A DNA stretch of 30,995 nucleotides from Macrostomum lignano (taxonomy: Eukaryota): contig NIVC01004932.1 of assembly GCA_002269645.1 (NCBI GenBank), positions 1 through 30,995 on the forward strand, read 5' to 3'. Under the pieces are notes generated by a model. That model worked only from the letters and a program-made list of their open reading frames with translations, ran no database searches and was not told the DNA's origin. Every line of letters begins with the position of its first letter. Within the stretch, counting starts at the first letter, position 1. Positions 1,701 to 30,995 of the stretch are shown here, piece after piece. The position numbers were made by a program, and so were the translations under genes.

Positions 1701-3018
1701 GTTTTACATGAATTTAGTTAGTTCTAGTAGGTTGCAGGTTGCTAAGTGTGAGGGTTAGAGATTATTCGGGCTTTCGCAAATCTATGTGTTGAGTTGTATA
1801 AAATTTGGGATAGAAAGATTATAGAAAAGTACTTAGTTATCCGTCTCTTGACTCTGTCCATAGATGATTAAACAGTCCTTTGTTTCTCTCGGTTGTCAGG
1901 CAGCTTGGGGTTGATCTCGCCCTCTTGGGCCACTTCAGGTTGGATAGGAGTCTGTAGGTGGGCCTCACTTTTCTCCCTCAGGGTGCGCCAGAAGATGCCG
2001 CGTGCCGCGTTGTTCTCTAAGCTGGGCCACTTCTCTCAGCCAGTTTAATCGGCATGGTTCCTGCGGCGGGGTGTCGTGGCTGACTGGAATGGGAAGGGGC
2101 TTAATTGGATTCGAGATTCAATTTGATTGACAGCTGAGTAATTATCTTAGAGCTGTTCCTATTTGTTGTTCTCTTACTAACTAAAGGTTCCATTGTGCTT
2201 TTCTGCCTCGCCCTTCACTGCGTCTGGACTTTTCATAAATTTCTATCTATCTTCTTTCTGAGAGCAAAACTTCAGATTTCTAACTCTTATACGGAGAGGC
2301 CGATGGCTGCAGCCGGAGACAGCTGCTGTCCGTTGCCAAGTGGTTTCCTAGCGAGCGGTTTTCGAGCGGGAATTCGCGGTCGCCTCTCGGCCAGCCCAGG
2401 TGGCTCCGGCTGATGGAGCGACTCGAGGGATTCGGGTTGCATGCCGGAGTTTGGCAGGTTTCTGTTGCTGCGCGACCTGTCTCCGTTCTCCAGCTATCTA
2501 TCTATCTGGGGGGAGGGTTTCTGCTTTGCAAATAGAAACAAAAATGGTCGGTACGTTTGTTTGTCTGTTATAAAGTAAATCTAAACCTAATCTATTTTCT
2601 AATTGTATTTACAAGGGTGAAAATTTTACTGTTTGTAGAAAGCATGACAGCATTACATTGCCTGTCAAGGCTTGTCATTTTGACGGGGGTACCACTGACA
2701 GAATTGATTTCGGGATGCCACTTAATTTTGATGGATCTCGATGGGATTTGATTCCCCGTACTCTGAAATAGTCGCAGAAGCGATCCCCATTAAAATCCAG
2801 GTCAATATGTAAGCCTGCGGCGTCCAGAATGTCGCTAACTTGTAGTGTAACTCTCCTATGTTTTCGTCAAATTTTCCAGGTAACTTTCCTGGTTAATAAA
2901 ATCGAGTAGAAGTCATTTACAACCATGAAACCAACTCAGTCGTGTAGGATATTGTTTCTAGATTGATTTCCAATCAAATCCGCCTCAAAAAAATGCTCAA
3001 ATCTATGGGCATCTATGA

Positions 3019-3164
3019 TTTTTTTGTTCTTGCATAAAAAATCGGGTCCTTGGCATACTCTTAGCATGCTACTGTGGTCAGTTGGTGAGTTTGCGTGTTT
3101 GCCCCTAAATTATAATTAATATAGAAAAATTCATATTTTAAAGCCAAAAATTATCTTCAGATAA
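3019..3164. repeat. Dispersed repeat, copy B (related to 332-505)
   Basis: Direct degenerate match to 332-505 with an internal deletion of about 30 bp. Confidence 0.8.
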
Positions 3165-3289
3165 TCAAGGCGGCACTTCGGTCACATGAGGAGGCAATAT
3201 TCAAAAGTTTATTTTGAGGCATTTGTCGCGAAATTATGTTTTATCCTCAATCATTATTTGTGGAGATTCCTGATCAACAACGAGGCCCC

Positions 3290-3425
3290 TCACAAAAGTG
3301 TGCAAAAACCCTCTTAAAAGCGTGCGATTCTCCTCTTATAAGCGTGCGATTCCCCTCCTATAAGTGTGTGAAGCCCATTTACAAGCGTGCGAGGCACCTC
3401 TTAAAGATGTGCAAAGCCCCATAGA
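3290..3425. repeat. Degenerate ~21-22-bp tandem repeat (ctcttataagcgtgcgattc-like)
   Basis: About 6 units sharing an a(a/g)gcgtgcga / aagtgtg core. Confidence 0.65.
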
Positions 3426-3482
3426 AGCCCCATCTTCAAACCGGCCCTCATCCTCAATCAGAATTTTCTGGTGGTTTCTGCC

Positions 3483-3517
<35 letters not shown>

Positions 3518-3539
3518 CATATATCCATATATCTATCTA
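3483..3539. repeat. (TATC)n microsatellite
   Basis: Directly visible. Confidence 0.95.
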
Positions 3540-3910
3540 GAGGCCACGAGAACGGTATTTGAGGCCCTGAGTACTGTTTTTGAGGCCGTTAGAGCGGCTG
3601 AAACTAAAAACAGAAAAGTGAGCTCTATAACCCTGAGAACAGATTTTGAGGCCCTGAGAACGGTACTTGAGGCCGTTAGAGCGGCTGAAACTAAAAACAG
3701 AAAAGTGAGCTCCATAACCCTGGGAACGGTTTTTGAAGCCTTGAGAACGGTATTTAAGGCCCTGAGTACGGTTTTTGAGGCCGTTAGAGCGGCTGAAACT
3801 AAAAACAGAAAAGTGAGCTCCATAACCCTGAGAACGGTATTTGAGGCCCTGAGAACGGTATTTGAGGCCGTTAGAGCGGCTCAAACTAAATACAGAAAAT
3901 TGAGCTCCAT
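3540..3910. repeat. Composite minisatellite: 4 higher-order units (about 87/108/87 bp spacing) made of a 45-bp block plus 2-3 copies of a 21-bp block
   Basis: tagagcggctgaaactaaaaacagaaaagtgagctccataaccct occurs 4 times, interleaved with gagaacggtatttgaggccct. Block lengths divisible by 3 explain the repetitive ORFs on both strands. Confidence 0.92.
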
Positions 3911-4042
3911 AACAATAAATTTCCAATTCTCTTTGAAACAACAAGTCAGGTAAAAGACTGATCAATGTCATCACCAGGATTTGGTCGAATATTGATTGTC
4001 TCCGTGGCCAACCTGTTCCGAATTATTGAATTGAATAAGATT

Positions 4043-5735
4043 TATTGTTGCCACGTGTTGTTGCCTTTACCTTCCTTTATCTCACACATGAAACTTATCT
4101 ATCTGTTTTACATGATAGGAAGCAATTTATTTACATTACATTCTTTACATTACATTACATTTTACATTACATTATTTACATAAGAAGCAAAATTTCAAAA
4201 CAAAAAAATACAAAAACTGGAGAATTGTGGAGCCTGAAGGCATAAAGCATGCAACATGAAAATCAAGTTTAAAACATGAATTATAAAACAGGAATGTAGA
4301 AAACCGTCCGCATAAGTAGTGAATAAAAAGTCTACTAAAAATACAGTCTAACCTAAGCATTAAGTCTATGTACATCTGCAAACCTACTATTTAAAAATAT
4401 ACAGGCGCAAGAGCCAATCTTTAAAACGGCTGACGCGCGGCCAGGGAGTGTTGGCTTGACACTCCCTCGGCATACTTATTAAGGAACGAAGTGAATAAAA
4501 AGTCTAGTTGAAGAAATTATAAATGTAGTTCACCACATTCAACGTAAAAAAAATCTGCGGCTGCTGGGCTCTGCATGCGTCCTCTTCTTTCCTTGCTCAA
4601 AATTCTTTATTGTTGCCACGTGTTGTTGCCTTTACCTTCCTTTATCTCACACATGAAACTTATCTATCTGTTTTACATGATAGGAAGCAATTTATTTACA
4701 TTACATTCTTTACATTACATTACATTTTACATTACATTATTTACATAAGAAGCAAAATTTCAAAACAAAAAAATACAAAAACTGGAGAATTGTGGAGCCT
4801 GAAGGCATAAAGCATGCAACATGAAAATAAAGTTTAAAACATGAATTATAAAACAGGAATGTAGAAAACCGTCCGCATAAGTAGTGAATAAAAAGTCTAC
4901 TAAAAATACAGTCTAACCTAAGCATTAAGTCTATGTACATCTGCAAACCTACTATTTAGAAATATACAGGCGCAAGAGCCAATCTTTAAAACGGCTGACG
5001 CGCGGCCAGGGAGTGTTGGCTTGACACTCCCTCGGCATACTTATTAAGGAACGAAGTGAATAAAAAGTCTAGTTGAAGAAATTATAAATGTAGTTCACCA
5101 CATTCAACGTAAAAAAATCTGCGGCTGCTGGGCTCTGCATGCGTCCTCTTCTTTCCTTGCTCAAAATTCTTTATTGTTGCCACGTGTTGTTGCCTTTACC
5201 TTCCTTTATCTCACACATGAAACTTATCTATCTGTTTTACATGATAGGAAGCAATTTATTTACATTACATTATTTACATTACATTACATTTTACATTACA
5301 TTATTTACATAAGAAGCAAAATTTCAAAAAAACAAACAAAAAACTGGAGAATTGTGGAGCCTGAAGGCATAAAGCATGCAACATGAAAATCAAGTTTAAA
5401 ACATGAATTATAAAACAAGAATGTAGAAAACCGTCCGCATAAGTAGTGAATAAAAAGTCTACTAGAAATACAGTCTAACCTAAGCATTAAGTCTATGTAC
5501 ATCTGCAAACCTACTATTTAAAAATATACAGGCGCAAGAGCCAATCTTTAAAACGGCTGACGCTCGACCAGGGAGTGTTGGCTTGACACTCCCTCGGCAT
5601 ACTTATTAAGGAACGAAGTGAATAAAAAGTCTAGTTGAAGAAATTATAAATGTAGTTCACCACATTCAACGTAAAAAAAATCTGCGGCTGCTGGGCTCTG
5701 CATGCGTCCTCTTCTTTCCTTGCTCAAAATTCTTC
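4043..5735. repeat. Three near-identical head-to-tail ~565-bp units, each with a (TTACA)n tract and a GC hairpin
   Basis: Identical ORF starts at 4045, 4610 and 5174. The hairpin gggagtgt-tggcttg-acactccc is in every unit (first at ~4444-4466). Confidence 0.95.
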
Positions 5736-7862: not shown

Positions 7863-9075
7863 ATGGCGTCTACAATCACCAAGAAGATTAGATTAAAATC
7901 TCCGGCCTGAACTGGGCTACATGAATACAGCGGTTACTGGCCTTGTGACCGAGTTGAAGGAGACAGGTCCTACATGAAGAACGATGTTCGTGGCGAAGTT
8001 TTTTCATTCGTCTTGGTGGACGACTCGGCTGAGATGAGAGTCAGTCAGATGAGAGAAAGTTTGTAATACTTCCGATGCTGTTCGCGTAGCCGGCGGTATG
8101 GTAAAGACTTCGGATCCGAGATACAACTGAACGAACAATCCTATGGAGGTATCTCTTTCAGTTGACTCCAAGGGATCAATATATCGAAGCAATGAAGTTC
8201 GACTGTTATTGAACGGGCGTGTAACTATACTGAATAAGCGACCTTCAAAACGTACGCCTGCAAGGGTGAGTTGCATTGTATCTGTCTACTTGTATGTATT
8301 GTATAGACAGACAGTATACAATATTATTATATGTACAATAGACATAATAGTATAGACAATGTGAATTGTATATGCAATCGTGTAGCACTGTAGTGTATGT
8401 TCGGCTTTTATAAATTATTTTGACTAGATTAGCAATCCAATCTATGCCTTCATCCCTTTATGTTGGCTAGTCTAGCAGTCCATTATATTCATTCGACCAT
8501 TGATGTAGGTAGGATTCAAATGAACTTCAAAAAGCGTTTTAAGGTTTTAAAATACTTTTCAAATTGTCCCCTCTTCATTGCCTTTTATTAGAAATGTTGA
8601 TGTCCTTGGAGCAATCGACACACTGCAGCAGTCCGAGAAAGTCATGACGAAGGCTGGGAAGCGAATAAACGTAGCTAAAGTGACTCTTGTTGACCAGTCC
8701 TGTCGTTCTGTCTCCTGCACGTTTTGGGGGTCGTCCTCCGATCAAGCTGTCAATTGGAGTGTCGGCGACATTTTGTCGATACGACGAGCAAAAGTACAGG
8801 AGTACGCCGGCGCTGTTGTACTTGGATGTACTTGCTCTGAAGTTCGGCTCAACTCGGACGACACCGAGGTTACGACTTTGACTGACTGGTACACGAATGC
8901 TAAGCAGAGCGATACTGAGTTTCAACCTCTGGGTGCTCCGTGTCCATCAGGCGCGGTTGGCGGCTCTTCTGACCAAAGGGGAAACAACAGGCGAGTTTTT
9001 ATGCAACTACCGGTTTCGCACGAATCCTTCCGGGATGTATACGAAATTGTCTTGGACTTTGGAGAAGGAATAAAG
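7863..9075 (+). pseudogene. RPA70 (RPA1)-like ssDNA-binding OB-fold gene, spliced, with frameshifts and a stop in the 5' part; probably Helitron-type cargo
   Basis: 7965-8039 encodes RSYMKNDVRGEVFSFVLVDDSAEMR (compare RPA70 DBD-A LFSIELVDESGEIR). 8592-8915 encodes NVDVLGAID..KVTLVDQSCRSVSCTFWG..ILSIRRAKVQEYAG..TLTDWY (compare DBD-B VDIIG..LMDTSGKVVTATLWG..VLAIKGARVSDFGG..LRGWF). Donor GTGAGT at 8266, acceptor AG at 8590-8591, donor at 9076. Confidence 0.8.
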
Positions 9076-9544
9076 GTGCGCGTGTTCATTGTATATGTAA
9101 CTTATTTAATGTTTAGTATCTTTCTTCTGTAGTACAGATCTATGCACTCTAACTTACTACAGTATTGTGCTAGCCCTTATGGTTCCTACTGAAATTATCT
9201 CACCAAGTTGCTGCAGTTCTTTAGTTCTAACTTCTCTATCCTATAAATTGTCACTAATATATCTACTTTGAGTAGCGTTGGCAGCCCTACTCTATGACTC
9301 TTTCCTAGAGATTTCTAATTTCACACGGTTTCCTAGAACCCTTGTAATAGCGTGTAGTGCCCGAGCGGTAAGACACTGTCTAATTCCCTAATTCAGTTCG
9401 AAAGTCTAGCGTTTTCCGAGGATCAAGGGTGTCCAGCAGTAGCCAATCTATTCCCCTAATGCCTAATCCCTCAACACCTAATGTCTATTATAAGCCTGTA
9501 CGGTTTTCTTAGGATCTGTACGATCTCGATCTCCCTACTCCGGT

Positions 9545-9752
9545 TTCTATTCTTGGGTCTCCACGACCTCAAGTTTCCTATTCAGATCCTTAATCTTGGG
9601 TCTCCACGACCTCAAGTTTCCTAACCAGATCCCTAGTTCTGGTCTCCACAACCTCAAGTTTCCTAACCTGATCCCTAGTTCTGGTCTCCACGACCTCAAG
9701 TTTCCCTATTAGGATCCCTAGTTCTTGGTCTCCACGACCTCAAGTTTCCTTA
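9545..9752. repeat. Five ~42-44-bp tandem units (ggtctccacgacctcaagtttcct...gatccctagttct)
   Basis: Unit starts at 9556, 9599, 9641, 9683 and 9727. Confidence 0.92.
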
Positions 9753-9845
9753 TACAGTAAATAAATTTTAAGGTTGAACTTCAATTACTAAAAGTTTCTC
9801 ACAAAAGCGATTGCCAAACAAGCAGAGAAGGTTGTTTTATTTTCA

Positions 9846-12694
9846 TTTCATTTTTTTCATTTGGTAAGTTGGGGCTATCAAGGGGCCCTGCGCATCAGCC
9901 CTGGGGAGGGCTCTTACGCAACTAATTTGTTTTAGTTTCCAGTTTGAGCGATACATTTAGTATTTTGTTGGAGAAATAAAACAAATATTTTCTAATAAAT
10001 AATACAATAATGCCATTTAAAAACTTAAAACAAATAATAGAGTACAATTAATCAATATAGAGTCAATTTAAAGCAAATGGTTGAAGTATTGAGTAAAACA
10101 AATAAATATAAATAAATATGATTGATAAAACTAAAACAAATATTGGGGTGTAAATATGTACAATGAATCACAAAGCAGTAATGTTTTGAGTGTTTTGGTT
10201 TAAAAATGGAGGCCAGCTTCTTCACTACTATTGAGAGTAGCTAGACACGGCTATGATATAGGAACCTGCCTATGTTAGTTAACCTTACGAAAACGAAGGA
10301 TTCCCTGGGAGGACTTGGAGAATACCGTAAGTAGAGAGGTCCCTACCCACAGGTGAGGGTTTTGCAAATTTTGTTAATCGGCAAACCGGACGCAACAGCA
10401 TCCCAACAAAGCAAGCCCAACTGGTAAGTTCAGCATTCAGATATCCTTTCTTAGTGATAATTATAAGTAGTGGACCTGGCCCCACAATAAACAGCATTTT
10501 GGGTGAATAATGTAAAACATGTTAGAGAAGTATAAAAGATAATACTGTGAGAGGGTGTAAACGTTAAAACAGAGTGTGATTGGTACTGTACTTTGAATGT
10601 CAAGTAATTAGCACAGCATTACATAGAATCGTAAGTATTCCCGACCCCGGACAGAGGCGCTCGAGTTATAAATTGAATCACATTTGCGTAATCTGTCTGA
10701 GTTTAGTAGTAAAGGGGACCCTGAACCCAGGTCTGGCCTATTCTTTGGTGTCATTTTTGAACCCATGGATTTCACTCTCCAGGGCTTTTTTGTACCATTT
10801 TTTAGCAAGATTGAGGAGTCGATCCTTAACCATAGGCATCTTGGTGACCTGGTGTAAGTATGTGATTTTAGTATAAGGCGGAGCATCTATAGAGAGGCGA
10901 AGAGCCTTATTTTGCAGAATTTGTAACTTGTTGACAAGGGATGCCAGTAGATTGATGAGCACTGGAGCGCCGTAAGTCATTGTGCTCTCAATGTAAGATC
11001 TATAGATGAGGCGAAGAGCCAGTTGCGAAATCCTGGAGTTCTTAGCCATCCTAGCTAGCGCAGCCATTTTGGCAGTCGAAGACCAAGCTACCTTGTCGAT
11101 ATGGGCCCTAAAGTTAAGCTGTTTGTCAAGAACCATCCCTAGGAAGGTGACGGAATCATAGTACTTGATTTTGTCTTGTCCAAGTTTAATTGGAGGATCG
11201 TCTGGACCTGTTTTGTTCCCATTAGCTTTGAAAAAGGAAATGGCTTTACTTTTGGAGGGATTGATGACTATGCCCAAATTGTCAAGCCACTTTTTGAGGA
11301 CAATGAAGTATGAGTTAAGCCTTTTAGCGGACATAGTGGATTTTCTGGCAGAGGCCCATACTGCTAAGTCGTCAGCGAACTGACTAAAGCGGACCTTGCT
11401 GTCAGTGGGCTTGGGTATAGAGCTAGCGAAGATGATAAAGAGCAGGGGCGAGAGCACCCCACCCTGCGGGACACCCGCCGTTGGCTGAAAGACCTCGCCC
11501 CGGGCTCCTCCAACTATAATTCGTGTCATGTTGTGCGGGATTTTACTTTTCCAGATTTTATATTTAAGGTAGTCCAGCCAGACTCCATCGAAGGCTCCTT
11601 TGACATCAAAGAAGACCCCCAACGTGTACTGCCTCAACTGAAGCATTTTCAGCACATCGTCGGTGAGTCTTACTATATTGTCATATGTGCAGTGATCGAA
11701 TCTGTAGGCACATTGTTCCTCATTAATAATTCCTAGGTTTTCTAAGATAATTCTAAGGTTTTTAGCTAGAATCTTCTCGTAAAGTTTACCAACACAGGAG
11801 GTTAGGCTGATGGGTCTATAGCTTTCCACGAGATTTTTGGATTTGTTTGGTTTAGGGATCATCTTGATGATGGCCTTTTTCCATTGTTTAGGGAAGTATC
11901 CTATGAGAAAACTAGAGTTGTAAATTTTTGCGAGCACTCTGATGGAGTCCGGGCTGAGACCATATTTCAAAACCATGTTAGGAATTCTATCCGGACCGGG
12001 AGCTCCTCCTGACCTAAGTTTTCTGCTCTCCCAGAGCACGTCCTGGTCAGTAATGTTTAGGATATCGCTTTCGATATCTTCTTTATCTGGATCAATCGGG
12101 TTCGCGTGCTCTTTATGGTATGAAAGTGCCGCGATTATATTTTTATGGGGTTTGAAGATCTCATGATCTTTGTACTTGCTGACTTTTTCGTAGATAAGCG
12201 AGTCTTGGTTGGGGTGAGATTGCATTTGATCTTTTAGAAAGTCGCTGAAGAGTGAAGCTTTTTCTGCCTCAGTCTCGGCATGCGAATCCTTGTAGACTAG
12301 AAGGGGATAGTTGATCATTTTGGACCTTTCTCCTGTCATCTTTTTGATGTCAATCCAAAATTTTTTGGGTTTTTTTTGTAACTAGTTTTAGCAATTTTGT
12401 GGCATAGATCTTCGAATTTCCTATATCTATGCATACGTATGGCATTTCGTATTTCTTTAGCTGCTTGATTGGCTTGAACTCTGAAGTCGTCTATTCTAGT
12501 TTTTTGAATAATTTTCTAATTTTCCTCCTATGCTTAATTTTGTTAATAATATCTGGGGGAAGCTGCTCCCTAGGGTCCCGGTTGGGTACAACATCCTCAA
12601 TGGTGTCATGAATGCACTGATTTAGCAGATCAACCGCTTTATCTAGGTCCTCAGGTGTGGAGAATCTACAACTGAGAAGCTGTTGGTTGCTAAG
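9846..12694 (-). mobile_element. Non-LTR retrotransposon (Jockey/I group), 3' half: ORF2 RT region, ~0.85-kb 3' UTR and A-rich tail
   Basis: RT ORF present; the minus-strand tail aatgaaaaaaaatgaaa (~9846-9862) is preceded by a GC-rich, potentially folded segment (9871-9920); the left end of the Gypsy LTR cuts it at 12694. Confidence 0.85.
10738..12694 (-). pseudogene. LINE ORF2: RT domain open over 10738-12339, with a frameshifted upstream linker; APE endonuclease absent
   Basis: Motifs GAPGPDRIPN, WKKAIIKMIPKP, SYRPISLTS, FFDVKGAFD, GVPQGGVLSPLLF and QFADD. Upstream frames give STPEDLDKAVDLLNQCI and KNFWIDIKKMTG. About 10 aa appear deleted before VGGARGEVF. No RNase H. Confidence 0.93.
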
Positions 12695-13012: not shown

Positions 13013-14760
13013 AGCGGACCCAGCCTTCCAGCACCAGCGCCTTTTCTTCCCGTGAGCGGCCAACCGGCAGTCCCGTGGCCAAGATGGCTGGACGCGTTCG
13101 AATTCTTCTACACGGCATCCCAGTTTCGGGAGCCGGAGGGGCAATCCGAGGCGGAACCCACAAAGAGGAATCTGCTGCTCCACCTGCTCGGATTCGAAGG
13201 CCAGCGCATTGCCAAGGCGAGAAAAGCACTCACGGAGGGAGATTCCTTCAAGGAGGCGAAGGCAAAGCTGGACGGGCGGGATCTTCGGAGAGAAGCCCAA
13301 CGTGATGGTGGCTCGCTTCCGATTCCGCCAACGACACCAGCTGCCCGGCGAAGACGCAGAGTCCTTCGTGGCCGCGCTCAGGGAGCTGGCCGAGCCCTGC
13401 GAGTACGGAAATCTCCGAGACCAGCTCATCAGAGACCAACTGGCAGAGAAGACTGGCAGCGCTCGCATCCGAGAGCGACTGCTGACGGAAGACGCGGCTA
13501 CTCTCACGCTGGAGAGGGCCCTCGCCATCGCCGTCACCATCGAGAAGGCGTCAAAGGGCTGTCAGGCTCTGATGGAGACGGAGCCCGTGCACGCGGTCCG
13601 GCAGGCGCAGAAGCCAAAGGCGAAGTGGAGCGGCGCGGCGGAGCCAGCTAAGAAAGGCCAGCAAAGTCGACCCGCCGCCAAGGCCTGCTCTCGCTGCGGA
13701 CGCAGTCACGGCGACGGCAACTGCCCAGCGAAGGGGCAGTCCTGCAACAGCTGCGGCAAAATGAACCATTTCAGCCGTTGCTGCCGGAGCAAGGCGCTCC
13801 AAGTGACCGGCCAGGCTCAGGACGGCCCGGACGAGGCGGTCACTATATACGCCGTGCAGGGAGACGGTGAGATCCGTGCGCAGCTGCGGTTCGGACAAGC
13901 AGAGGTGCCGGTCAATACTCTGATCGACTGCGGCGCCAAGGTGTCACTGTTGAACGCCGACACGGCCGCGCTCCTGACCGAGGTGCTACCTCAGCCGACA
14001 ACGATGAAGCTGCGCGCATACGGCGGCAAGCTGATCGATCTCGTGGGCCAAGCGGTGGTCCCCGTTAAGCACAACAACCGGTCGCTGCAACACCTATTCT
14101 ACATCGCGAAGCACGGCGACAACATCGCAGGCCGAGACCTCATGGATAAGCTCGGTTTCCATGTGAGCCTCTCCGAGGACGTCAGCGAGGTGAACAGCGT
14201 CGTGGAGCAGCTGGAGAGGCAGTTTCCAGCGGCCCTTAGCGAGCAGATCGGCTGCTGCAGCGGAGCCGTGCACAAGCCCGTCATCGAGCAGCAGCTGGTG
14301 GAGGCCGAGCTCGACAAACTGGAAGTGGCTGGCAGCATTCGAGCGGCCAAGGAGGACTGCACGCCGCTGTCCGACGCCATCACCCAGTTCCTGGAGGTCT
14401 ACCGGAGCACGCCGCACAGCCTGACGGGCAGGAGCCCCGCCGAGCTCATGCTAGGGCGATCGATGCGGACGATGCTGACTGCCCTGGCGCCGCCCAAAGA
14501 CATCAATGAGACGGACGAAGGATGGCGACTGCGCGAGACCATCTACGACCGGCAACAGCGGACCAAGCGCTACACGGACCTACGCCGCCGGGCGCGAGTC
14601 AGCGACCTCCGACCAGGCGATTGGGTCCGAGTGCGGCGGCCCATCAAGAAGGGCAAGCTGGCCACGAGACTGTCCGGCCCGCTACAGATCATGACCAAGG
14701 CCGGCGCCGCGTACCGGCTGAGCGACGGCACGACCTGGAATCAACAGGCGTTGGTCCCCA
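13010..14760 (+). pseudogene. Gypsy/Mag gag-protease with a pol remnant; RT, RNase H and the integrase core are deleted
   Basis: MSGPSLPAPAPF..WPRWLDAFEFF..LLHLLG; frameshift at ~13270-13285; ARFRFRQRHQLPGE..IRDQL; two knuckles (CSRCGRSHGDGNC, CNSCGKMNHFSRCC); protease LIDCGA..IAGRDLM; RT start EAELDKLEVAGSI joined to the integrase C-terminus FLEVYRSTPHSLTGRSPAELMLGR..YRLSDGTTWN. Confidence 0.9.
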
Positions 14761-14764
14761 CAAG

Positions 14765-16528
14765 CGCTAGGGCCGTACCAGAGGAACAGCTGGTACAAAA
14801 TATTGCGTACCAGGCCGGAGCACAACTGGTGCAGGAAACACGGTGGACAGCCGCGGACAAAGTCAAACCCGTGCAGTCGAGACAGCGGTGACAGGCCACG
14901 GACACCGAGGACGTCAGTCCGAATGTCGCCACCCTGCTGTGCGTGCTGCTCAGCGAGAGTGTGAGTGTCGCTGGTCGACCGCACTACAGTCTGAACGCAT
15001 CCTAGACGTCTGGCCTGATTAAGCATCGCGTCAGTAACCCCGACGCCGTAGACTCGTCCATGGCCTGATGGATGCAATGATGTCCGGATGTAGCACTTCT
15101 CGCATCCGTAGATAGCCGAGAAACGCTTCATGCACAGAGCGTCCGCTCTCGCTGGAGCGTCGAACAGCGCCATTAGCGGATGCAGATGCAATCGACGCTG
15201 AACCCCGAGGCTGTCGATATACTGTACACCATCGAAGCGCAGAGTATTCAGTGCATTTACGACGATTGGCAGAAAGGCGGCGGCATGGACCTTTTTCTTG
15301 CCGGCCCACACGCCACACTTCATCACGAATCGGAGCTTCAGCCGCTCGTGCACTTCGTTAATACTCAGATAGACGGGGCACACCTCGACATTGCTAGTGC
15401 AGAAAAGAGGAAATCCGTCTGCACAGATGGTGTATGTAAGGTCGCTCCGAGTCTCGGGTTCGATGTTCTCGAGAAACGACTTGTACAGTTCGCTGTTGGC
15501 AAAGTGCAGCTTCTCTTCGTCCAGTGCAAGCCGTTCAATCGGAAATGTTACGCTCTGTAGAAGACCGCGAGATTCAACGAATGTTCGGATCTGCGCAGGT
15601 ATGTCGAATAACCAGAAGTTGGCCACATTTTCCGACGTACAGTGCGCACAATTAGAGTTTCCTGGATCGCAGCGCTGCTCGGAATGTAGATAACAGTCGT
15701 TGCAGACAGTGTAACATGTTGACGACCCCGAGATTGTTCCCCTCTTCTTCAAAGTTTCACGCAATGTTCGTCCGTGCTGAGGAAGGCGGTTGTCGGGTAC
15801 TAGCCTGTGCAGTAGTGAAAGCAGCCTTGTCGTCCCGCTAACTGTCAGGTTCAGTTCCCTCGCGCAGGAGCTGACCTCCCAAATCGCCTCTCCGAGCGAA
15901 ACGGGCAGAGCGTCGTGCCAATTGACTCCTGGAAACCCCGGGACGTCCTCGTCGTTGTCGGAGTCTGTGCTCTGGCCGTCAACAGACTGCGAACCTGGGA
16001 GGAATATATTGTGTGTGGTGAGCGTAGTGCGCATGTGTTCGGTGGACAGTGTGAGTGCAACGTGCAGGTAACACAAAAGTATCAAACATGAGCCATTGGG
16101 ATGGATCCACAATCCACGATAAGCCAACTCTCTGACTGGGACTCACCACTAGAGGAAGAATCCCCGTCCGAAGTGCTGTCAGAGCTCGACACCGGGTCCC
16201 CATTGCGGCCATCGGCCTGTGCGCCACCGTCGTCGGACTCTGGATTGTCTATAGGCAGGTATACAGACTGCTCATCTCGAGATCGAGATACTGTAGATGT
16301 AGAGGCGGATCCGCTTGCAGCTGCGACGACTGCAGCAGTCCCACTGGTGCCTGCGCCGCCGGACTGGACTTCGCCGGAGTCGACATCTGCAGAAGTTCCT
16401 GCGGTTGGACGCAGAGGTGATCGCGAACCTTCTTGTCGACTATTTGAATTGGCCAACGCACGCTGCCGCATGTACTCTCGCATGTACTGCCTCCGCTGTA
16501 ACCGCGGCGGTAAATCTGAATTGTCCAT
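14765..16528 (-). CDS. CACTA/EnSpm transposase, two exons (16528-16147 and 15994-~14765), 3'-truncated
   Basis: Donor GTGAGT at 16146 and acceptor CAG at 15995 join in frame (SSS-G-SQSVDG). Motifs: CNDC..CAHC, TICADGFPLF..VYLSINE, ALFDAPARA..YGCEKC, LSPLSRLHGFDFVRG..LHQLCSGLVRNIL. Confidence 0.88.
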
Positions 16529-17345: not shown

Positions 17346-17360
17346 GGCTATCCAGGCGGG

Positions 17361-19553
17361 TAATGGCAATTTCGTTCGCTTCTTTTACTTTACTACATCT
17401 ATATGAGTAAGCTGGGTGTTCTTCGCCGCAGTTTGCGCATTTAAATTTGCTTTCTTTCGGGCAGTCTGCAGAATAGTGATCTCCCGCACATTTGTTACAC
17501 CTGTAGGTTGCTGTGCATCTGTTTTCATGATGCCCTAATCTCTGACATTTTTTACATTGGATTGCTTTTACCGGAGCTAAATTAATAGACTCTTCGCATT
17601 TAAATTTGCTGTAACCAAGGTAGACTCCATGCTGGATGCATCTTTCCATCGTGCCCTTGCTCTTAGTGAAGAGGCGGATGTGCGGAGTAGGTGCACCAGT
17701 TGCCCTAGAGACAATGCGCACAGCGCCGTCAATTGGTAGTTGCTGCTCTGAGTCTGCCAAGTGTTTGGCTAGCATGTGTGCGTCTACGGTGATTGGCACA
17801 TGTTTTACGATAAACGAGTACGTTGTTGGTGATTTTAGTGGAGCACGCGCCTGATCATCTCCTTGTCTTATTGGCCTTTTGGCTGCTGTGCGTCGCGTGA
17901 CTTCGTGGTTATTAATTTTATTTATTTTGAGAATAGCTGTTAATAGTGTGTTGAAGTCCTTAGGGTGATCTGGAATCACGATGTAGCCGGAGCTATGGTA
18001 TAGGTCCTTAACCGACCTGATGCGAACGTCTGGGAAATTTGTTTTCAGAAACCATTCGAATTTGATGGGATCTTTGCCTTCTTGGTCGATTTCAAAGATG
18101 ACAGGTGCTGAGTTAGTAGATTTTTGAGTATTATTAGTTTTAGGATGGTAGTTTAGAGTTGTAGAGTTTAGTTGGCTAGATTGGTTAGATTGGTGAATGT
18201 TAGGTTGCTGAGTAGCTGGCAGCTTGTAGTTGTTAGGTGGTTGAGTTTGGTCGCCTGATTGCTGAGTGTCTGAAAGTGTCTGCTGATTGTTTGCATGTGG
18301 TTGCAGAGTTGCTGAGTGCTTCGGCAGAGTGCTAGACTGAGTGGCTGACTGTAGTGTACCTGATGGCTGATTTGACAGAGTGTGCCTGCTGAGTGTTTGT
18401 TGAATGTTGCTGAGTGCCTGATTGAGTGTGTTGTTTGGTGCTAGACTGAGTGGCTGACTGCTGAGAGCCAGTGAGCTGGTTAGCTGTTTGAGATTGCTGA
18501 GTGCTTGATTTGTGCCCCGAAGTGCAGCTGTTCGAACGTGATCTGATCTTTTTCAGATTTTCGGCTTCTTGCTCTGCTCTGCGACGAACCGAATTTTCGT
18601 CGTCCAGATCGCAGGTGATATCGTTGTCAAGAGGCTGCACGCAAGGGTTTGCAAGAGCAGAAGCAGGAGCAGGATCAGGTGGGATTCTGCTATCATACGT
18701 TAGCCTGAATGTTAGATTTACTCTTGCCTCTTTGACTTTTAGGTCCTTAAGGACGGCGTGCTGGAAGTGTGCCTGTGTCGCACCCCCCATTACCAGCAGA
18801 GAACCACTGGCGAGTTTTTGGGACCAAGCGATGTTGGTGGAGCCTTTGGTTCGTAAGTGGAAGTCACGTGCGGCACCAATAGAGATAGAGGCTATGGTCG
18901 GATTAGCCCCTAGTTCGTCTTCATCGTCTGAGTGCCAAGGAATGTGCACGGACCCATCTTTGTAATAATTTACGAGGCATGAGTTGAAGACGGGTAGACC
19001 AAACTCAGCGCTCAGCCAAGTAGCAAGACTAGTAACCAACGGGTGCCAGTCGTCATTGGCCGGAATCTTAGTTCCCCCGTAGCTATATTCTGGCCTGAAC
19101 CATACAATTTTGCGGGCTTCAGGACGGCCTTTTGTGAGATGGTGAAAGGCTTTTGGCCTGGATTTCGTCGGTTAGTATTTTGAGTATTTGATTTTCCGAG
19201 CTCTTAAGAGCAACCGGGTAGTAGCAGATGTTGCTGTTGTTTGGCAATGTGACAGTTTTCTCATCAGTCTTGTCAGCTATTGGAATTCGTATTATAGTTG
19301 TTTTACCATGTTCTTTTCTAACCTCTAAACTGTCCCTTTTAGGGGGAGGCAAAGGCTCAGCCCGCTCACCTTTGGACGTGCCGGTTTGCGGAGGCGTCTC
19401 GGGCAGCGGCGCGTTTGATGGAGACAGCATGGTCTTAGGTTCGGATCTTCGGCTTGGACCAGCTGAGTCTCGGTGATTGGCTTTTTTTGAGTTCGCAATC
19501 GGAGGTGAGTCCGTGTCGCGGGCACTGCGTTTGCTGTTACACTCAACGTTCAT
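17361..19553 (-). CDS. LINE ORF1 with two frameshifts: N-terminal low-complexity region, AlkB/2OG-Fe(II) dioxygenase, Q/S/T-rich linker, gag-like domain with 3 CCHC knuckles
   Basis: Track ORFs 19119-19553, 18332-19039 and 17233-17979 join through shifts at ~19160 (in gccaaaagcc) and ~18390-18420. The third frame is open from ~18400 into VIPDHPKDFN. AlkB motifs: IVWF..YSYGG, FNSCLVNYY, WHSDDE, IASISIG, FQHAV, RVNLTFR. Knuckles: CKKCQRLGHHENRC, CNKCAGDHYSADC, CANCGEEHPAYSYRC. Confidence 0.85.
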
Positions 19554-23630: not shown

Positions 23631-24340
23631 CCGAATGCCCGATGATTCACCTTAGGAACACCTTGTTAGAGGCACCTAAGCGGTTGAGCTGCCCGATACA
23701 GTCGAGGACTGTACGCGAACAGGTGGTGGTGCGCTCAAGGGCGTGAATCGCCGCTTGACTGTCTTAGTGGAGGGTAATTTCATTCCCCCAGACGCTTGAT
23801 TGTACAGCTCCATGGCGCAGGAGCTGATGGCGAGAACTTCGTTCTGGAAGACGGTGGAGCAGGTGCCGGTGTGTTGGGAGAAGTCGCCACAGTTCTCCCT
23901 CCAGACACGATGCAGTAGCCGTAGCCAGAGGCGGAGTTGATTTGGGACCCATCAGTGAAGCAGTGGATTTCATGGGGTTTCCAGTTGTCTCTTGTTTCAT
24001 GACGTGGTGGAATGCTGGTTTTGAATTTGAGCGGAGGGCAGAGCGTGGACGGGATTCCGTCCGAGAGGGTCAGCAGCCCTCCCACTGCTTCCAGGTCACG
24101 CAGGCTGAGGTCGCCATGCGGCCGGAGGTTCCGCTTTCTGAAGGCGAACTTAGCTCCCTCCTTCACCTCCTTTGCTGCCTTTCTCTTCTGAGCTGGCCGA
24201 TCTACTGGATCGCATGTGTGCGGGGCAAGGGCTTCTGGATTAGGACACCCGCGTCAACCTGAACTAGCTGAACAAGAAGGAGTTCATGCCGGCGAAGGGC
24301 GTAGAGGGAGCCGCGCTCATGATAGCTCGACAAGCGCGGC
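23630..24340 (-). pseudogene. 3' fragment of an RNase H-bearing LINE (I/R1/Loa type)
   Basis: QGRACRAIMSAAPSTPFAGM (RT C-terminus), HCFTDGSQ..SGYG, STVFQNEVLAI, H*DSQAAIHAL..SRTVLDC..LNRLG..NKVFLR*IIGHSG; stops and frameshifts present. Confidence 0.85.
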
Positions 24341-24374
24341 CTTGCACCCTATTTAGAACCTCAAGAACCCCTTT

Positions 24375-25766
24375 CACCTCTAGGGCACTATTCCAAATGA
24401 AAATTGACTTGACAAGTGAAATCGATTGGCGCATTACCTGTTGATTCCCAAAGGCAACGAAAGCAGGCTTGATAATCAGCTTGAGCCTTACCAGACATCA
24501 AAAAGAAGGCAAGTGGTACCTGCCTCTCCTGCCCATCAAAGCGAATTGCACCGTGTACACTGTAAAGCTGTTTCAAAGTTGCCTTGACAATGCTAAAAGT
24601 TCCGTCGCACTGCAAGATTCGTCGGGATGATAATATTTCTCGCTGAGTTGTTGTCATGAAGACGAAGTGTCGCCCGTTTGTCTCAGGAACTGTCACATCC
24701 TGCAAATGAAACTGGGCAGGTACATGTCTAGGATCAACTTGGAAAGGTATGTCAGCAGGTTCCATGGGGCGATCTTTTGACAACCTTCATCAAAAAGAAG
24801 GCAAGTGGTACCAGCCTTTTGCTGGTACCAACCTGCCCATCAAATCGATTTGTCTCAGGAACTGTTACATCCTGCAAATGAAACTGGGCAGGTACATGTC
24901 TAGGATCAACTTGGAAATGTATGTCAACAGGTTCCATGGGGCGATCTTTTTTGCGACTGTAATTAGCATTGCGACTTAATGACTCAATACTAAGCACCTC
25001 CTGCACTTCTGGTGAAAATTCTCTTACCTTCTCCTCCACAATAATTCTAGCAGAAGTAAACAACATGCGCTTTGCTCCCTCTTTTACCTCCTTTGCTGCC
25101 TTTCTCTTCTGAGCTGGCCGATCTACTGGATCGCATGTGTGCGGGGCAAGGGCTTCTATGGTTCCATCAGCCCGGCGAACGGCGGAGCCATGACAGTGCA
25201 GTGATAAACGCTTAGTGCAGCGATAGTACGTGTTGCCATTTCGCCGCGTTTTTGCATCCATCAGGTGGCCAAGGTCTCGTTGGACGTACTGCCCTAGAAG
25301 GTCTTTTCCGTGACTGCATCCCGCACCTGTAAGAATCTCAAAGGGCTGGGGAGGTGGGCTGCGGGGCGGTGCAAGCTCTGCTGGAGGAATTTGAATGGAT
25401 TCTTCCAGAGCTGGATCAGGGTCGTTGAAATCTGCATACTGGTAAAGAACATTTTCCGCTTGTGCCGGAATCAGATGCACTGGTTCTGGATTTTCAGCAG
25501 GTACAGCTGCTGGTCCAGCATTTGGGGCTTGTACCACTGCAGCCTCTGCAGGTTGGGACACTGCTAAGTTACCTGCAGGACCCCGTCTATTGCACTGATT
25601 GCAAAGCCAGAAAAACTCACCGACATTTCTCATTGCAGCATACTGAGACATTGTGACACGACTATCACATGCACGGTGCTGCCAATTCAGGCATTGAGAA
25701 CACTCAATTGCTTCTTGTCCATCGAGAACCGGCTGCAGACACCACACATGGATATGCGCCTGCCAT
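24375..25766 (-). pseudogene. Mutator/MULE transposase with N-terminal PHD and FLYWCH domains; rearranged and truncated
   Basis: ATG at 25766 (MAGAYPC, then a frameshift); PHD (CLQPV..IECSQCLNWQHRAC..WLCNQC); FLYWCH-like (YYRCTKR..CHGSA..HTC); MULE motifs LQCDGTFSIV..QLYSVH..VPLAFFLMSGKAQADY. Confidence 0.88.
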
Positions 25767-30391: not shown

Positions 30392-30536
30392 GTAGGTGAA
30401 AATCTCTTTCTACTGTTTCCAAGGACGCGCCTAGAAGCAGAACCAAAACCCGAGTTTGCAGAGAAAAGTAGCCTAAGGATAGGTTTATTGGACGCCATCA
30501 TTGAAACGCCTTGCCTAGCCAAGACCAAGGGGCTTT

Positions 30537-30995
30537 GGCACCAAGGAGCTTTAGCACCAAAGGGCTTTAGCACCAAGGGGCTTTAGCACCAAAGGGCTTT
30601 AGCACCAAGGGGCTTTAGCACAAAGGGGCGCCAGCACCAAGGGGCTTTATCATCAAGGGGCGCCAGCACCAAAGGGCTTTAGCACCAAGGGGCGCCAGCA
30701 CCAAGGGGCGCCAGCACCAAGGGGCGCCAGCACACACAAGGGGCGCCAGCACCAAGGGGCTTTATCACCAAGGGCGCCAGCACAAAGGGCTTTATCACCA
30801 AGGGGCGCCGCACAAGGGCTTTATCATCAAGGGGCGCCAGCACAAAGGGTTTAGCACAAGGGGCGCCAGCACCAAGGGGCGCCAGCACCAAGGGGCTTTA
30901 TCACCAAGGCGCCAGCACCAAAGGGCTTTATACCAAGGCGCCAGCACCAAGGGGCGCCAGCACCAAAGGGCTTTATCACCAAGGGGCGCCAGCAC
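30537..30995. repeat. ~15-19-bp minisatellite of mixed agcaccaaggggcgcc and agcaccaagggcttt units, running off the window end
   Basis: Directly visible, more than 20 units. Confidence 0.95.

What the first reader, a model, noticed from the sequence alone, without database searches (positions are those of the whole stretch)
17361..19553. LINE ORF1 fused to an apparently catalytically complete ALKBH2/3-like AlkB dioxygenase
Seen in sequence: three track ORFs join through two single frameshifts into one ~730-aa truncated ORF1 with the order N-terminus, AlkB (~18700-19240), Q/S/T linker, gag-like triple CCHC knuckle. The Fe ligands (H-x-D in WHSDD, distal H in FQHAV), the N-x-Y motif and the 2OG-binding R-x5-R (RVNLTFR) are all present. 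Established: ALKBH2/3-type enzymes oxidatively demethylate 1mA/3mC in ssDNA and RNA, and some plant RNA viruses fuse AlkB to their replicase. Inference: an AlkB tethered to the RNA-coating ORF1 protein could repair or erase methyl marks on the element's own RNA or cDNA, as damage repair or counter-silencing. I cannot tell whether this architecture is already catalogued.
Basis: partly seen in the sequence, partly recalled or inferred. Interest (0 to 1): 0.8.

Follow-up and report, generated by a model that had tools for sequence, protein, structure and literature searches.

The report
LINE retrotransposon carrying AlkB demethylase
This is a dead copy of a flatworm-type LINE retrotransposon whose RNA-binding ORF1 protein carries a conserved ALKBH3-like demethylase domain, so a jumping gene appears to encode its own nucleic-acid repair or demethylation enzyme.

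Summary
On the minus strand, 19553-17350 reads collinearly in three frames as one ORF1. Its order is a low-complexity N-terminus, an AlkB domain (Pfam 2OG-FeII_Oxy_2, E 3e-30), a Q/S/T-rich linker, two RRMs and three CCHC knuckles.

The fusion is not a local accident. The six closest ORF1 relatives among 1.84 billion representative proteins all carry the same N-terminal AlkB. Two are Macrostomum lignano UniProt entries and four are uninterrupted 757-962 aa ORFs. In three contigs, an APE(+RT) ORF2 follows directly. More distant ORF1s lack AlkB.

The AlkB domains form one clade (NJ bootstrap 83-91%). They keep every catalytic residue and are the most conserved part of ORF1. They match ALKBH3 best (profile E 1e-41; predicted fold TM 0.86), not ALKBH5 or FTO.

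The window copy itself is broken:
- two frameshifts;
- a Gly-to-Arg change in the WFG motif;
- ORF1 cut at about 17350;
- no APE;
- a collinear RT fragment at 12643-10684.

The most likely role, which is inferred and not shown, is removal of RT-blocking 1mA/3mC from the element's own RNA or cDNA. I found no published description. Repbase and Dfam could not be checked.

The parts
19308..19553 (-). Putative ORF1 start (ATG 19553-19551) and a basic, Pro-rich, low-complexity N-terminal region
   Evidence: Frame-0 ORF 19553-19119. N-termini are variable in the family. The start codon is inferred only.
18704..19307 (-). AlkB (ALKBH3-like Fe(II)/2OG dioxygenase) domain, interrupted by frameshift 1. 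Motifs: NxY 18970, HxD 18934, distal His 18766, RxNLTFR 18724-18704, WFG-to-WFR change at 19102.
   Evidence: Pfam E 3e-30. Alignment A1 invariants. PDB profile search: ALKBH3 E 1e-41. AF2 pLDDT 88.8 and Foldseek TM 0.86 to ALKBH3-ssDNA. Coordinates.
19150..19153 (-). Frameshift 1: a run of four A where the family reading (..IQAK AFHH..) needs three
   Evidence: Sequence compared with P0391. It could be a real mutation or a homopolymer assembly error.
18127..18703 (-). Acidic then Q/S/T-rich low-complexity linker containing frameshift 2 (both frames open 18332-18555; alignment suggests about 18386-18402)
   Evidence: The linker is the least conserved block in the family (dN 0.70 against 0.19 in AlkB).
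17887..18102 (-). First RRM-like domain of the ORF1 core (PVIFE...F..WL..NFP block)
   Evidence: AF2 model pLDDT 91, beta-alpha-beta-beta-alpha-beta topology at residues 9-80. Foldseek matches tandem-RRM proteins. Conserved in the family.
17590..17820 (-). Second RRM domain of the ORF1 core
   Evidence: AF2 model residues 103-179. Foldseek tandem-RRM hits. 31% identity to the AlkB-less LINE ORF1 of L001, E 4e-18.
17395..17556 (-). Three gag-like CCHC zinc knuckles (CX2CX4HX4C, CX2CX3HX4C, CX2CX3HX6C)
   Evidence: Sequence. All Cys/His residues are invariant in 32 ORF1 relatives.
17350..17365 (-). Breakpoint where homology to family ORF1 ends. The C-terminal ~190 aa of ORF1, the inter-ORF region and the APE domain are missing beyond it.
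   Evidence: tblastn end points 17365-17344. The family C-terminal domain seen has no match in the window.
10684..12643 (-). Degraded ORF2 fragment (linker plus RT, equal to L006 ORF2 aa 283-939), same strand and order as ORF1. It is probably the rest of the same disrupted element or a sister copy.
   Evidence: RVT_1 E 3e-35. tblastn to L006 ORF2: 36% identity, E 2e-116, in three frames. That is closer than any AlkB-less LINE (best 265 bits).

Best explanation
**Shown.** The locus is a non-functional copy of a family of APE-type non-LTR retrotransposons. The ORF1 protein of this family is a fusion with this order:
- variable N-terminus;
- ALKBH3-like AlkB dioxygenase;
- low-complexity linker;
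- two RRMs;
- three CCHC knuckles;
- C-terminal helical domain.

An ancestor of this LINE clade acquired the AlkB once. The domain has since been kept under strong purifying selection in at least three deep sublineages. One of these is in the flatworm Macrostomum lignano.

**Inferred.** ORF1p coats the element's own RNA, so the tethered AlkB would act in cis. It would use Fe(II), 2-oxoglutarate and O2 to oxidatively remove N1-methyladenine and N3-methylcytosine from single-stranded LINE RNA, and possibly from the nascent single-stranded cDNA. These lesions sit on the Watson-Crick face and stall reverse transcriptases. Clearing them would raise the yield of full-length cDNA during target-primed reverse transcription. 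This parallels how AlkB domains of plant RNA viruses protect viral RNA.
For: **Architecture recurs.**
- The six best ORF1-core relatives carry AlkB or its tail.
- The ORFs are uninterrupted at 757-962 aa and are followed by APE or APE+RT ORF2 in L006, L008 and L009.

**Restricted to one clade.**
- Among the 152 ORF1-search proteins held (the 150 best hits of 6,258, plus two cluster members), only seven carry a full AlkB domain. These are P0242, its cluster member P0391, P0243, P0244, P0245, P0248 and its cluster member P0392, that is five representative clusters. An eighth protein, P0241, keeps only the tail of the domain. None of the 120 RT relatives has AlkB.
- None of 80 ORF1-like metagenome loci has it.

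**Single origin.** TE AlkB monophyly is 91/100, and 83/100 with viral sequences added.

**Selection.**
- NxY, HxD, distal H and RxNLTFR are invariant.
- Between L008 and L009, AlkB has dN 0.19 with dS saturated. The ORF1 core has dN 0.28 and dS 1.65. The linker has dN 0.70 and dS 1.62.

**Enzyme class.**
- The profile hits ALKBH3 at E 1e-41 and ALKBH2 at 5e-31, far ahead of EcAlkB at 1e-6. There is no ALKBH5 or FTO hit.
- The fold matches ALKBH3 bound to ssDNA at TM 0.86.

**RNA tether.** Two RRMs plus three knuckles.

**Precedent.** Viral AlkBs demethylate 1mA/3mC and prefer RNA (PMC2553587).

That 1mA and 3mC block reverse transcriptases is established knowledge. It is the basis of AlkB pre-treatment in tRNA sequencing, which I cite from memory.
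Against: - No activity, substrate or in-vivo role has been measured for any member.
- ALKBH3-class placement predicts 1mA/3mC on single strands but does not prove it.
- The level of such lesions on LINE RNA in flatworms is unknown.
- Most LINEs do well without AlkB, so the benefit may be host-specific.
- The window copy is dead and says nothing about activity.
- The organism behind the Logan runs is unknown, so the taxonomic breadth is unclear.
Confidence: 0.6

Rival explanations
1. Epitranscriptomic counter-defence. The AlkB erases host-written regulatory marks (m1A, perhaps m6A or others) on LINE RNA that would otherwise recruit readers leading to decay, sequestration or silencing. Alternatively it demethylates host RNAs involved in TE control.
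For: The same idea was proposed, with m6A demethylation shown in vitro, for the ALKBH5-like ORF of orchid Ty3/Gypsy elements (PMC9289625). Tethering to an RNA-binding ORF1p fits this reading. Purifying selection fits any catalytic role.
Against: The domain is ALKBH3/2-class, not ALKBH5 or FTO. This class is best known for 1mA/3mC lesions. No evidence exists for such marks on these RNAs.
Confidence: 0.22
2. DNA-directed role. The enzyme repairs 1mA/3mC, for instance by-products of DNA methyltransferases, or removes adenine methylation on the single-stranded cDNA or target DNA at the integration site. This would protect the new insertion or evade DNA-methylation-linked damage.
For: ALKBH3 and ALKBH2 act on DNA, and the best structural match is ALKBH3 bound to ssDNA. 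A review states that M. lignano retains DNMT1/3 and ALKB2, and that DNMTs generate 3mC (PMC9246332). CCHC knuckles also bind single-stranded DNA (general knowledge).
Against: ORF1p is primarily an RNA chaperone. Nothing here distinguishes DNA from RNA preference. The profile scores below ALKBH3 against the dsDNA-specialised ALKBH2 (111 against 146 bits).
Confidence: 0.12
3. Chance juxtaposition or artefact. A host ALKBH2/3 gene or retrocopy happens to lie next to a LINE gag fragment, or gene models or assemblies fused them.
For: This window copy is frameshifted twice and sits in a nest of other TE fragments. The M. lignano UniProt models are imperfect (P0242 skips part of RRM2).
Against: Uninterrupted single ORFs with the same domain order occur in at least four divergent families, from several sequencing runs, with ORF2 directly downstream. 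AlkB and ORF1 core co-diverge, and the AlkBs are monophyletic. There are no introns, and the collinear homology crosses the frame changes.
Confidence: 0.02

Closest known systems
Type I LINE ORF1 proteins (RRM plus gag-like CCHC knuckles) of the Jockey/I group of non-LTR retrotransposons (Metcalfe & Casane 2014, PMC4120745)
   Same: Two RRMs followed by three CCHC knuckles with the CX2CX4HX4C / CX2CX3HX4C / CX2CX3HX6C spacing. A separate APE+RT ORF2. 31% identity to the ORF1 of an AlkB-less relative (L001).
   Different: A ~200 aa AlkB dioxygenase plus a long linker sits N-terminal to the RRMs. That survey of ORF1 modules does not mention AlkB or any dioxygenase.
Esterase-containing ORF1p of CR1/L2-type LINEs (PMC3905857)
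   Same: A catalytic domain built into a LINE ORF1 protein next to its nucleic-acid-binding parts.
   Different: A different enzyme (SGNH-type esterase, lipid-related) in a different LINE clade. The AlkB acts on nucleic acids.
ALKBH5-like extra ORF of Phalaenopsis Ty3/Gypsy LTR retrotransposons (PMC9289625)
   Same: A retrotransposon lineage that captured and retained an AlkB-family dioxygenase. Proposed to act on the element's own RNA.
   Different: It is an LTR element in plants. The AlkB is a separate ORF, recent and of host origin. It is ALKBH5-class and an m6A demethylase in vitro. Here the domain is fused into ORF1p of an animal LINE, is ALKBH3-class, and is old and divergent.
AlkB domains in replicases of plant RNA viruses (Flexiviridae and others; PMC2553587, PMC544882)
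   Same: AlkB embedded in a polyprotein of an RNA-based replicon. It shows 1mA/3mC repair with RNA preference, interpreted as genome maintenance. This is the closest functional analogue.
   Different: In viruses it is fused to a replicase, not to an RNA chaperone. Those are plant viruses with no reverse transcription. I did not test a phylogenetic link here.
Human ALKBH3 (and ALKBH2) and ~200 aa bacterial or giant-virus AlkBs
   Same: Best sequence and structure matches. About 33-35% identity to ALKBH3 with TM 0.86, and 39-51% identity to bacterial proteins. All catalytic residues are shared.
   Different: Those are stand-alone enzymes. The TE domains form their own clade and do not group with human ALKBH3 (11/100) or with any sampled bacterial or viral sequence.
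Viral helicase domain captured by TRAS LINEs of Lepidoptera (PMC5563155)
   Same: A LINE lineage that acquired and kept a foreign nucleic-acid enzyme domain.
   Different: There it is a helicase in ORF2 with a clear viral donor. Here it is AlkB in ORF1 with an unresolved donor.

Membership tests
AlkB family of Fe(II)/2-oxoglutarate dioxygenases (Pfam 2OG-FeII_Oxy_2) | Significant match to the family profile above the curated cut-off | tested here: met
   E 3.1e-30, 106 bits against a cut-off of 31.2, profile positions 55-194. The first third of the domain lies in the preceding frame. Relatives P0243-P0248 score 97-108 bits.
AlkB family of Fe(II)/2-oxoglutarate dioxygenases (Pfam 2OG-FeII_Oxy_2) | HxD...H iron triad, RxxxxxR 2OG-binding pair and NxY motif | tested here: met
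   H108, D110, H166, R178, R184, N96 and Y98 are invariant in 6 TE and 5 bacterial sequences.
AlkB family of Fe(II)/2-oxoglutarate dioxygenases (Pfam 2OG-FeII_Oxy_2) | Double-stranded beta-helix fold with an N-terminal nucleotide-recognition extension | tested here: met
   AF2 model pLDDT 88.8, pTM 0.86. Foldseek top hits are human ALKBH3 at TM 0.84-0.86 and ALKBH2 at about 0.80. This is a prediction, not an experiment.
AlkB family of Fe(II)/2-oxoglutarate dioxygenases (Pfam 2OG-FeII_Oxy_2) | Oxidative demethylase activity | not testable with these tools
   Needs a biochemical assay on an intact family member.
ALKBH2/ALKBH3 subgroup (1mA/3mC repair enzymes) | Closer to ALKBH3/2 than to EcAlkB, ALKBH1, 5, 8 or FTO | tested here: met
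   Profile A2 against PDB: ALKBH3 1e-41, ALKBH2 5e-31, ALKBH8 1e-8, EcAlkB 1.5e-6, ALKBH1 1e-4, and no ALKBH5 or FTO hit.
ALKBH2/ALKBH3 subgroup (1mA/3mC repair enzymes) | Orthology to, or recent descent from, an animal host ALKBH3/2 gene | tested here: inconclusive
   The TE clade groups with human ALKBH3 in only 11/100 NJ replicates. Distances are about 1.05 to ALKBH3 and 0.85-0.95 to bacterial or viral AlkBs. No flatworm host ALKBH sequence was available.
APE-type non-LTR retrotransposon (LINE) with type I ORF1 | ORF1 with RRM domain(s) and gag-like CCHC knuckles | tested here: met
   Two RRM folds in the AF2 model (pLDDT 91) with tandem-RRM Foldseek hits. Three knuckles with invariant Cys/His.
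APE-type non-LTR retrotransposon (LINE) with type I ORF1 | ORF2 with apurinic-like endonuclease and reverse transcriptase downstream on the same strand | tested here: met
   Met in relatives: L006 has APE+RT, and L008 and L009 have APE starting right after the ORF1 stop. In the window only an RT fragment is present (12643-10684) and APE is absent.
APE-type non-LTR retrotransposon (LINE) with type I ORF1 | Insertion hallmarks (target-site duplication, 3' tail) and multiple genomic copies | not testable with these tools
   The element ends could not be defined without other genomic copies. No eukaryotic genome search was available. Three distinct M. lignano-type proteins exist.
ALKBH5/FTO-type m6A demethylases (as in the orchid Gypsy element) | Best match to ALKBH5 or FTO | tested here: not met
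   No ALKBH5 or FTO sequence hit at E<=0.01. The ALKBH5 structural match is only TM about 0.65 at 18-20% identity.

The most novel reading that the evidence does not exclude
An animal LINE clade has permanently built a nucleic-acid demethylase into its RNA-coating protein. Each RNP would then carry its own repair or eraser activity to strip reverse-transcription-blocking or silencing-linked methyl groups from the template. This would be the first retrotransposon-encoded RNA/DNA repair enzyme in animals. It would also show that base methylation of the RNA intermediate limits retrotransposition.
Probability: 0.45. Interest if true: 0.8.

Novelty: new variant of a known kind. Interest (0 to 1): 0.7.

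Why it matters
LINE ORF1 proteins are regarded as RNA chaperones, and an esterase is the only well-known enzymatic add-on. A conserved ALKBH3-type dioxygenase tethered to ORF1p suggests that methyl lesions or marks on the RNA or cDNA intermediate are a real barrier to retrotransposition in some hosts.

The case is directly testable by demethylation assays, RT-stop assays and catalytic-dead reporter elements in a transgenic flatworm model.

It also adds a third independent case of AlkB capture by RNA-based replicons, after plant RNA viruses and an orchid Gypsy element.

There is a practical point too. TE-borne AlkB copies can inflate or confuse calls of host ALKBH2/3 presence in comparative studies that link these genes to DNA methylation.

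Tried and rejected
- **Word-indexed protein search with the RRM/CCHC piece:** nothing found. The full HMMER scan was needed.
- **Exact-sequence look-ups of window ORFs:** no contigs found, so the source genome and sister copies could not be fetched.
- **Other copies inside the window:** none.
- **Closest AlkB-only hits:** they turned out to be ordinary bacterial genes in bacterial contexts. They are neither TE copies nor a specific donor.
- **JGI metagenome scan with the ORF1 core:** only distant, AlkB-less ORF1s.
- **IMG/VR scan with the TE AlkB profile:** only stand-alone AlkBs of large phages and giant viruses, none sister to the TE clade.
- **Inverted or direct repeats to delimit the TE fragments between ORF1 and the RT fragment:** nothing usable. 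I therefore cannot say whether ORF1 and RT are one disrupted copy or two.
- **Papers that looked promising but were irrelevant:** mealybug genome and tubeworm genome.
- **Searching for the Logan run numbers in the literature:** nothing, so the host of P0243-P0248 is unknown.
- **First tree script:** it timed out and was rerun with fewer taxa.
- **dS between sublineages:** saturated, so only dN and relative conservation are reliable.
Full report
**1. What is in the sequence**

On the minus strand, three reading frames are open in succession:
- frame 0 from an ATG at 19553 to 19119;
- frame 1 from 19171 to 18332;
- frame 2 from about 18555 to 17233.

Adjacent frames overlap in intervals that are open in both, so one single-base shift at each junction joins them.

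The middle piece hits Pfam 2OG-FeII_Oxy_2 at E 3.1e-30, covering profile positions 55-194 of 194. The missing first third of the domain lies in the preceding frame.

The last piece has three CCHC knuckles (17556-17395) but no Pfam hit.

**2. The fusion is a family trait, not a local accident**

A word-indexed search with the RRM/CCHC piece found nothing. A full HMMER scan of 1.84 billion representative proteins then gave 6,258 hits.

The six best were P0241, P0242, P0243, P0244, P0245 and P0248, with E-values from 1.6e-86 to 4.3e-33 and 34-73% identity.

Five of the six have a 2OG-FeII_Oxy_2 domain N-terminal to the ORF1 core. The sixth, P0241, begins "MRINLTFRL". That is the tail of an AlkB domain, so it is a truncated gene model.

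A local AlkB HMM found a full AlkB domain only in seven proteins: P0242, its cluster member P0391, P0243, P0244, P0245, P0248 and its cluster member P0392. No other protein had it among the 152 ORF1-search proteins held (the 150 listed hits plus those two cluster members). None of the 120 RT relatives had it either.

P0242 and its cluster member P0391 are UniProt entries of the flatworm Macrostomum lignano, named only "Fe2OG dioxygenase domain-containing protein". The others come from Logan assemblies of runs SRR31628392-437.

tblastn of P0391 against the window gives collinear matches in frames -1, -2 and -3:
- 19223-19146;
- 19153-18386, E 2e-115;
- 18402-17365, E 2e-69.

This confirms the two frameshifts. 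The first is one extra A in an A-run at about 19150-19153. It could be a true mutation or a homopolymer assembly error.

**3. It is a LINE**

- **L006** (9,079 bp) carries the 843 aa AlkB-ORF1 at 1752-4283, followed by a 948 aa ORF2 with Exo_endo_phos_2 and RVT_1.
- **L008 and L009** carry the 962 aa and 757 aa AlkB-ORF1s. In both, an APE-containing ORF2 starts directly after the ORF1 stop.
- **ORF1 core fold.** An AlphaFold model of the window's ORF1 core (pLDDT 91) shows two beta-alpha-beta-beta-alpha-beta modules and then the knuckles. Foldseek returns tandem-RRM proteins such as HuR, Pub1 and hnRNP A1.
- **AlkB-less relative.** The core is 31% identical (E 4e-18) to the 637 aa ORF1 of an AlkB-less LINE, L001, whose ORF2 also resembles the window's RT.

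The architecture is therefore a type I ORF1 (RRMs plus gag-like knuckles, PMC4120745) with an added N-terminal AlkB. That survey of ORF1 modules mentions no dioxygenase.

**4. State of the window copy**

Homology to family ORF1 stops at 17365-17350, just after "KEANEIA". The conserved C-terminal ~190 aa seen in relatives is absent. So are the APE domain and the ORF2 start.

About 4.7 kb further along the same strand lies a degraded ORF2 fragment at 12643-10684.
- It matches L006 ORF2 aa 283-939 at 36% identity, E 2e-116, in three frames.
- That is closer than any AlkB-less LINE found (best 265 bits).
- It parallels the roughly 37% identity of the ORF1 core to P0243.

The order and orientation fit one element disrupted by a deletion plus nested TE fragments. 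Those fragments are a 64% GC retroelement-like ORF at 13209-14891 and unknown ORFs at 14682-16528. Two independent fragments cannot be excluded.

The AlkB also carries Arg in place of a near-invariant Gly (WFG to WFR, 19102).

Apart from these defects there are no in-frame stops over about 730 codons. I infer that the copy is young relative to its source. Because it is only 73% identical to the nearest M. lignano protein, I also infer that it represents another subfamily or a related species.

**5. What kind of AlkB, and where from**

- **Sequence class.** The window domain alone hits human ALKBH3 (E 1.6e-25) and then ALKBH2. A profile of the six TE domains gives ALKBH3 1.2e-41, ALKBH2 4.9e-31, ALKBH8 1e-8, E. 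coli AlkB 1.5e-6 and ALKBH1 1e-4, with nothing for ALKBH5 or FTO.
- **Predicted structure.** The AlphaFold model (pLDDT 88.8) superposes on ALKBH3 bound to ssDNA at TM 0.86.
- **Closest database proteins.** The closest proteins in the 5.8-billion-sequence database are ~200 aa bacterial AlkBs at 39-51% identity, and they sit in ordinary bacterial gene contexts. Stand-alone homologues also occur in giant-virus and large-phage contigs.
- **Trees.** In NJ trees the six TE domains are monophyletic: 91/100, and 83/100 after adding viral sequences. They join human ALKBH3 in only 11/100 replicates.

This supports a single, old acquisition. The donor, whether host, bacterium or virus, is unresolved, because no flatworm ALKBH2/3 could be included.

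**6. Selection**

All catalytic and cofactor residues are invariant across lineages that share only 36-43% identity in the domain.

Between the two related elements L008 and L009:

| Block | Amino-acid identity | dN | dS |
|---|---|---|---|
| AlkB | 72% | 0.19 | saturated |
| ORF1 core | 65% | 0.28 | 1.65 |
| Linker | 40% | 0.70 | 1.62 |

AlkB is thus the most constrained part of ORF1p. That argues for a catalytic function that benefits the element.

**7. Mechanism**

The steps that are shown are the domain order, the enzyme class, conservation, the RNA-binding tether and the LINE context. The steps below are inferred.

ORF1p assembles on its own RNA. The AlkB would therefore act in cis on single-stranded LINE RNA, and perhaps on nascent cDNA, removing 1mA and 3mC. 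These lesions block base pairing and stall reverse transcriptases (established knowledge). Removing them would favour full-length target-primed reverse transcription.

The best functional analogue is the AlkB domain of plant RNA viruses. It demethylates 1mA/3mC, prefers RNA and is thought to maintain genome integrity (PMC2553587).

Rival roles are:
- erasing host regulatory marks, as proposed for the ALKBH5-like ORF of orchid Gypsy elements (PMC9289625);
- a DNA-directed role linked to DNMT-generated 3mC, given that M. lignano is reported to keep DNMT1/3 and ALKB2 (PMC9246332).

Chance juxtaposition is effectively excluded.

**8. Novelty**

Eight of them looked for a published AlkB-LINE or dioxygenase-ORF1 fusion, and none found one. 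Of the other two, one looked for papers on viral AlkB and one for the Logan run numbers.

The nearest precedents are the orchid Gypsy ALKBH5-like ORF, plant-virus AlkBs, the esterase ORF1p of CR1/L2 LINEs (PMC3905857) and the viral helicase in TRAS ORF2 (PMC5563155).

The proteins already sit, uncharacterised, in UniProt. Repbase and Dfam could not be consulted. I rate it a new variant of a known kind: a LINE with an accessory ORF1 domain, or AlkB capture by a retroelement.

**9. Verdict**

The local copy is a pseudogene, but the family it reveals is real, conserved and apparently undescribed.

Noticed in passing
window 13209-14891 (+): A 560 aa ORF in a 64% GC island (13-15 kb). It has a gag-like CCHC pair, a protease-like 'DCGA' stretch and an integrase-tail-like end. 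It looks like a deleted LTR-retroelement polyprotein. No Pfam hit at E<=0.01.
   Followed up: partly
window 14682-16528 (-): Overlapping 481 aa and 148 aa ORFs with no Pfam hit. From memory, the 'DGFPLF...CPVYLSINE' region resembles tnp2/CACTA-type transposases. I did not test this. It lies between the LINE ORF1 and the RT fragment.
   Followed up: partly
window 8578-9132 (+): A 184 aa ORF with a Replication protein A OB domain (REPA_OB_2, E 8e-14). It may be TE-borne (Helitron-type RPA capture is known) or a gene fragment.
   Followed up: no
window 24149-25747 (-): A 331 aa ORF with a weak PHD-finger hit (E 0.002), next to a 131 aa ORF sharing duplicated segments (24149-24236 with 25070-25157, and 24677-24778 with 24849-24950, 97% identity). 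This is another repeated element.
   Followed up: no
window 4041-5734: A tandem duplication with a ~565 bp unit at 98-99% identity.
   Followed up: no
window 30518-30995 and 9547-9757: A tandem-repeat array running to the window end (about 80-84% identity between copies) and a short ~43 bp tandem array.
   Followed up: no
L006 4346-4717: A 123 aa ORF between AlkB-ORF1 and ORF2, overlapping the ORF2 start, with no Pfam hit. It may be spurious or a small extra ORF of this LINE family.
   Followed up: partly
family proteins P0243/P0244/P0245/P0248, C-terminal ~80 aa: A conserved hydrophobic/helical C-terminal block (e.g. 'LTSPP..P.PPS.L..VAC....SAVLG.PL..EQTCQMA..IVGGVTGA') of unknown function. 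It is absent from the truncated window copy.
   Followed up: no
literature (PMC9246332) against P0242/P0391: A review lists M. lignano as retaining ALKB2 alongside DNMT1/3. TE-borne ALKBH3/2-like domains such as these could confound presence/absence calls of host ALKBH2/3 in TE-rich genomes.
   Followed up: no
L093-L150 (IMG/VR contigs): Many giant-virus MAGs and large phage contigs encode stand-alone ALKBH3-like AlkBs, 30-59% identical over parts of the domain.
   Followed up: partly
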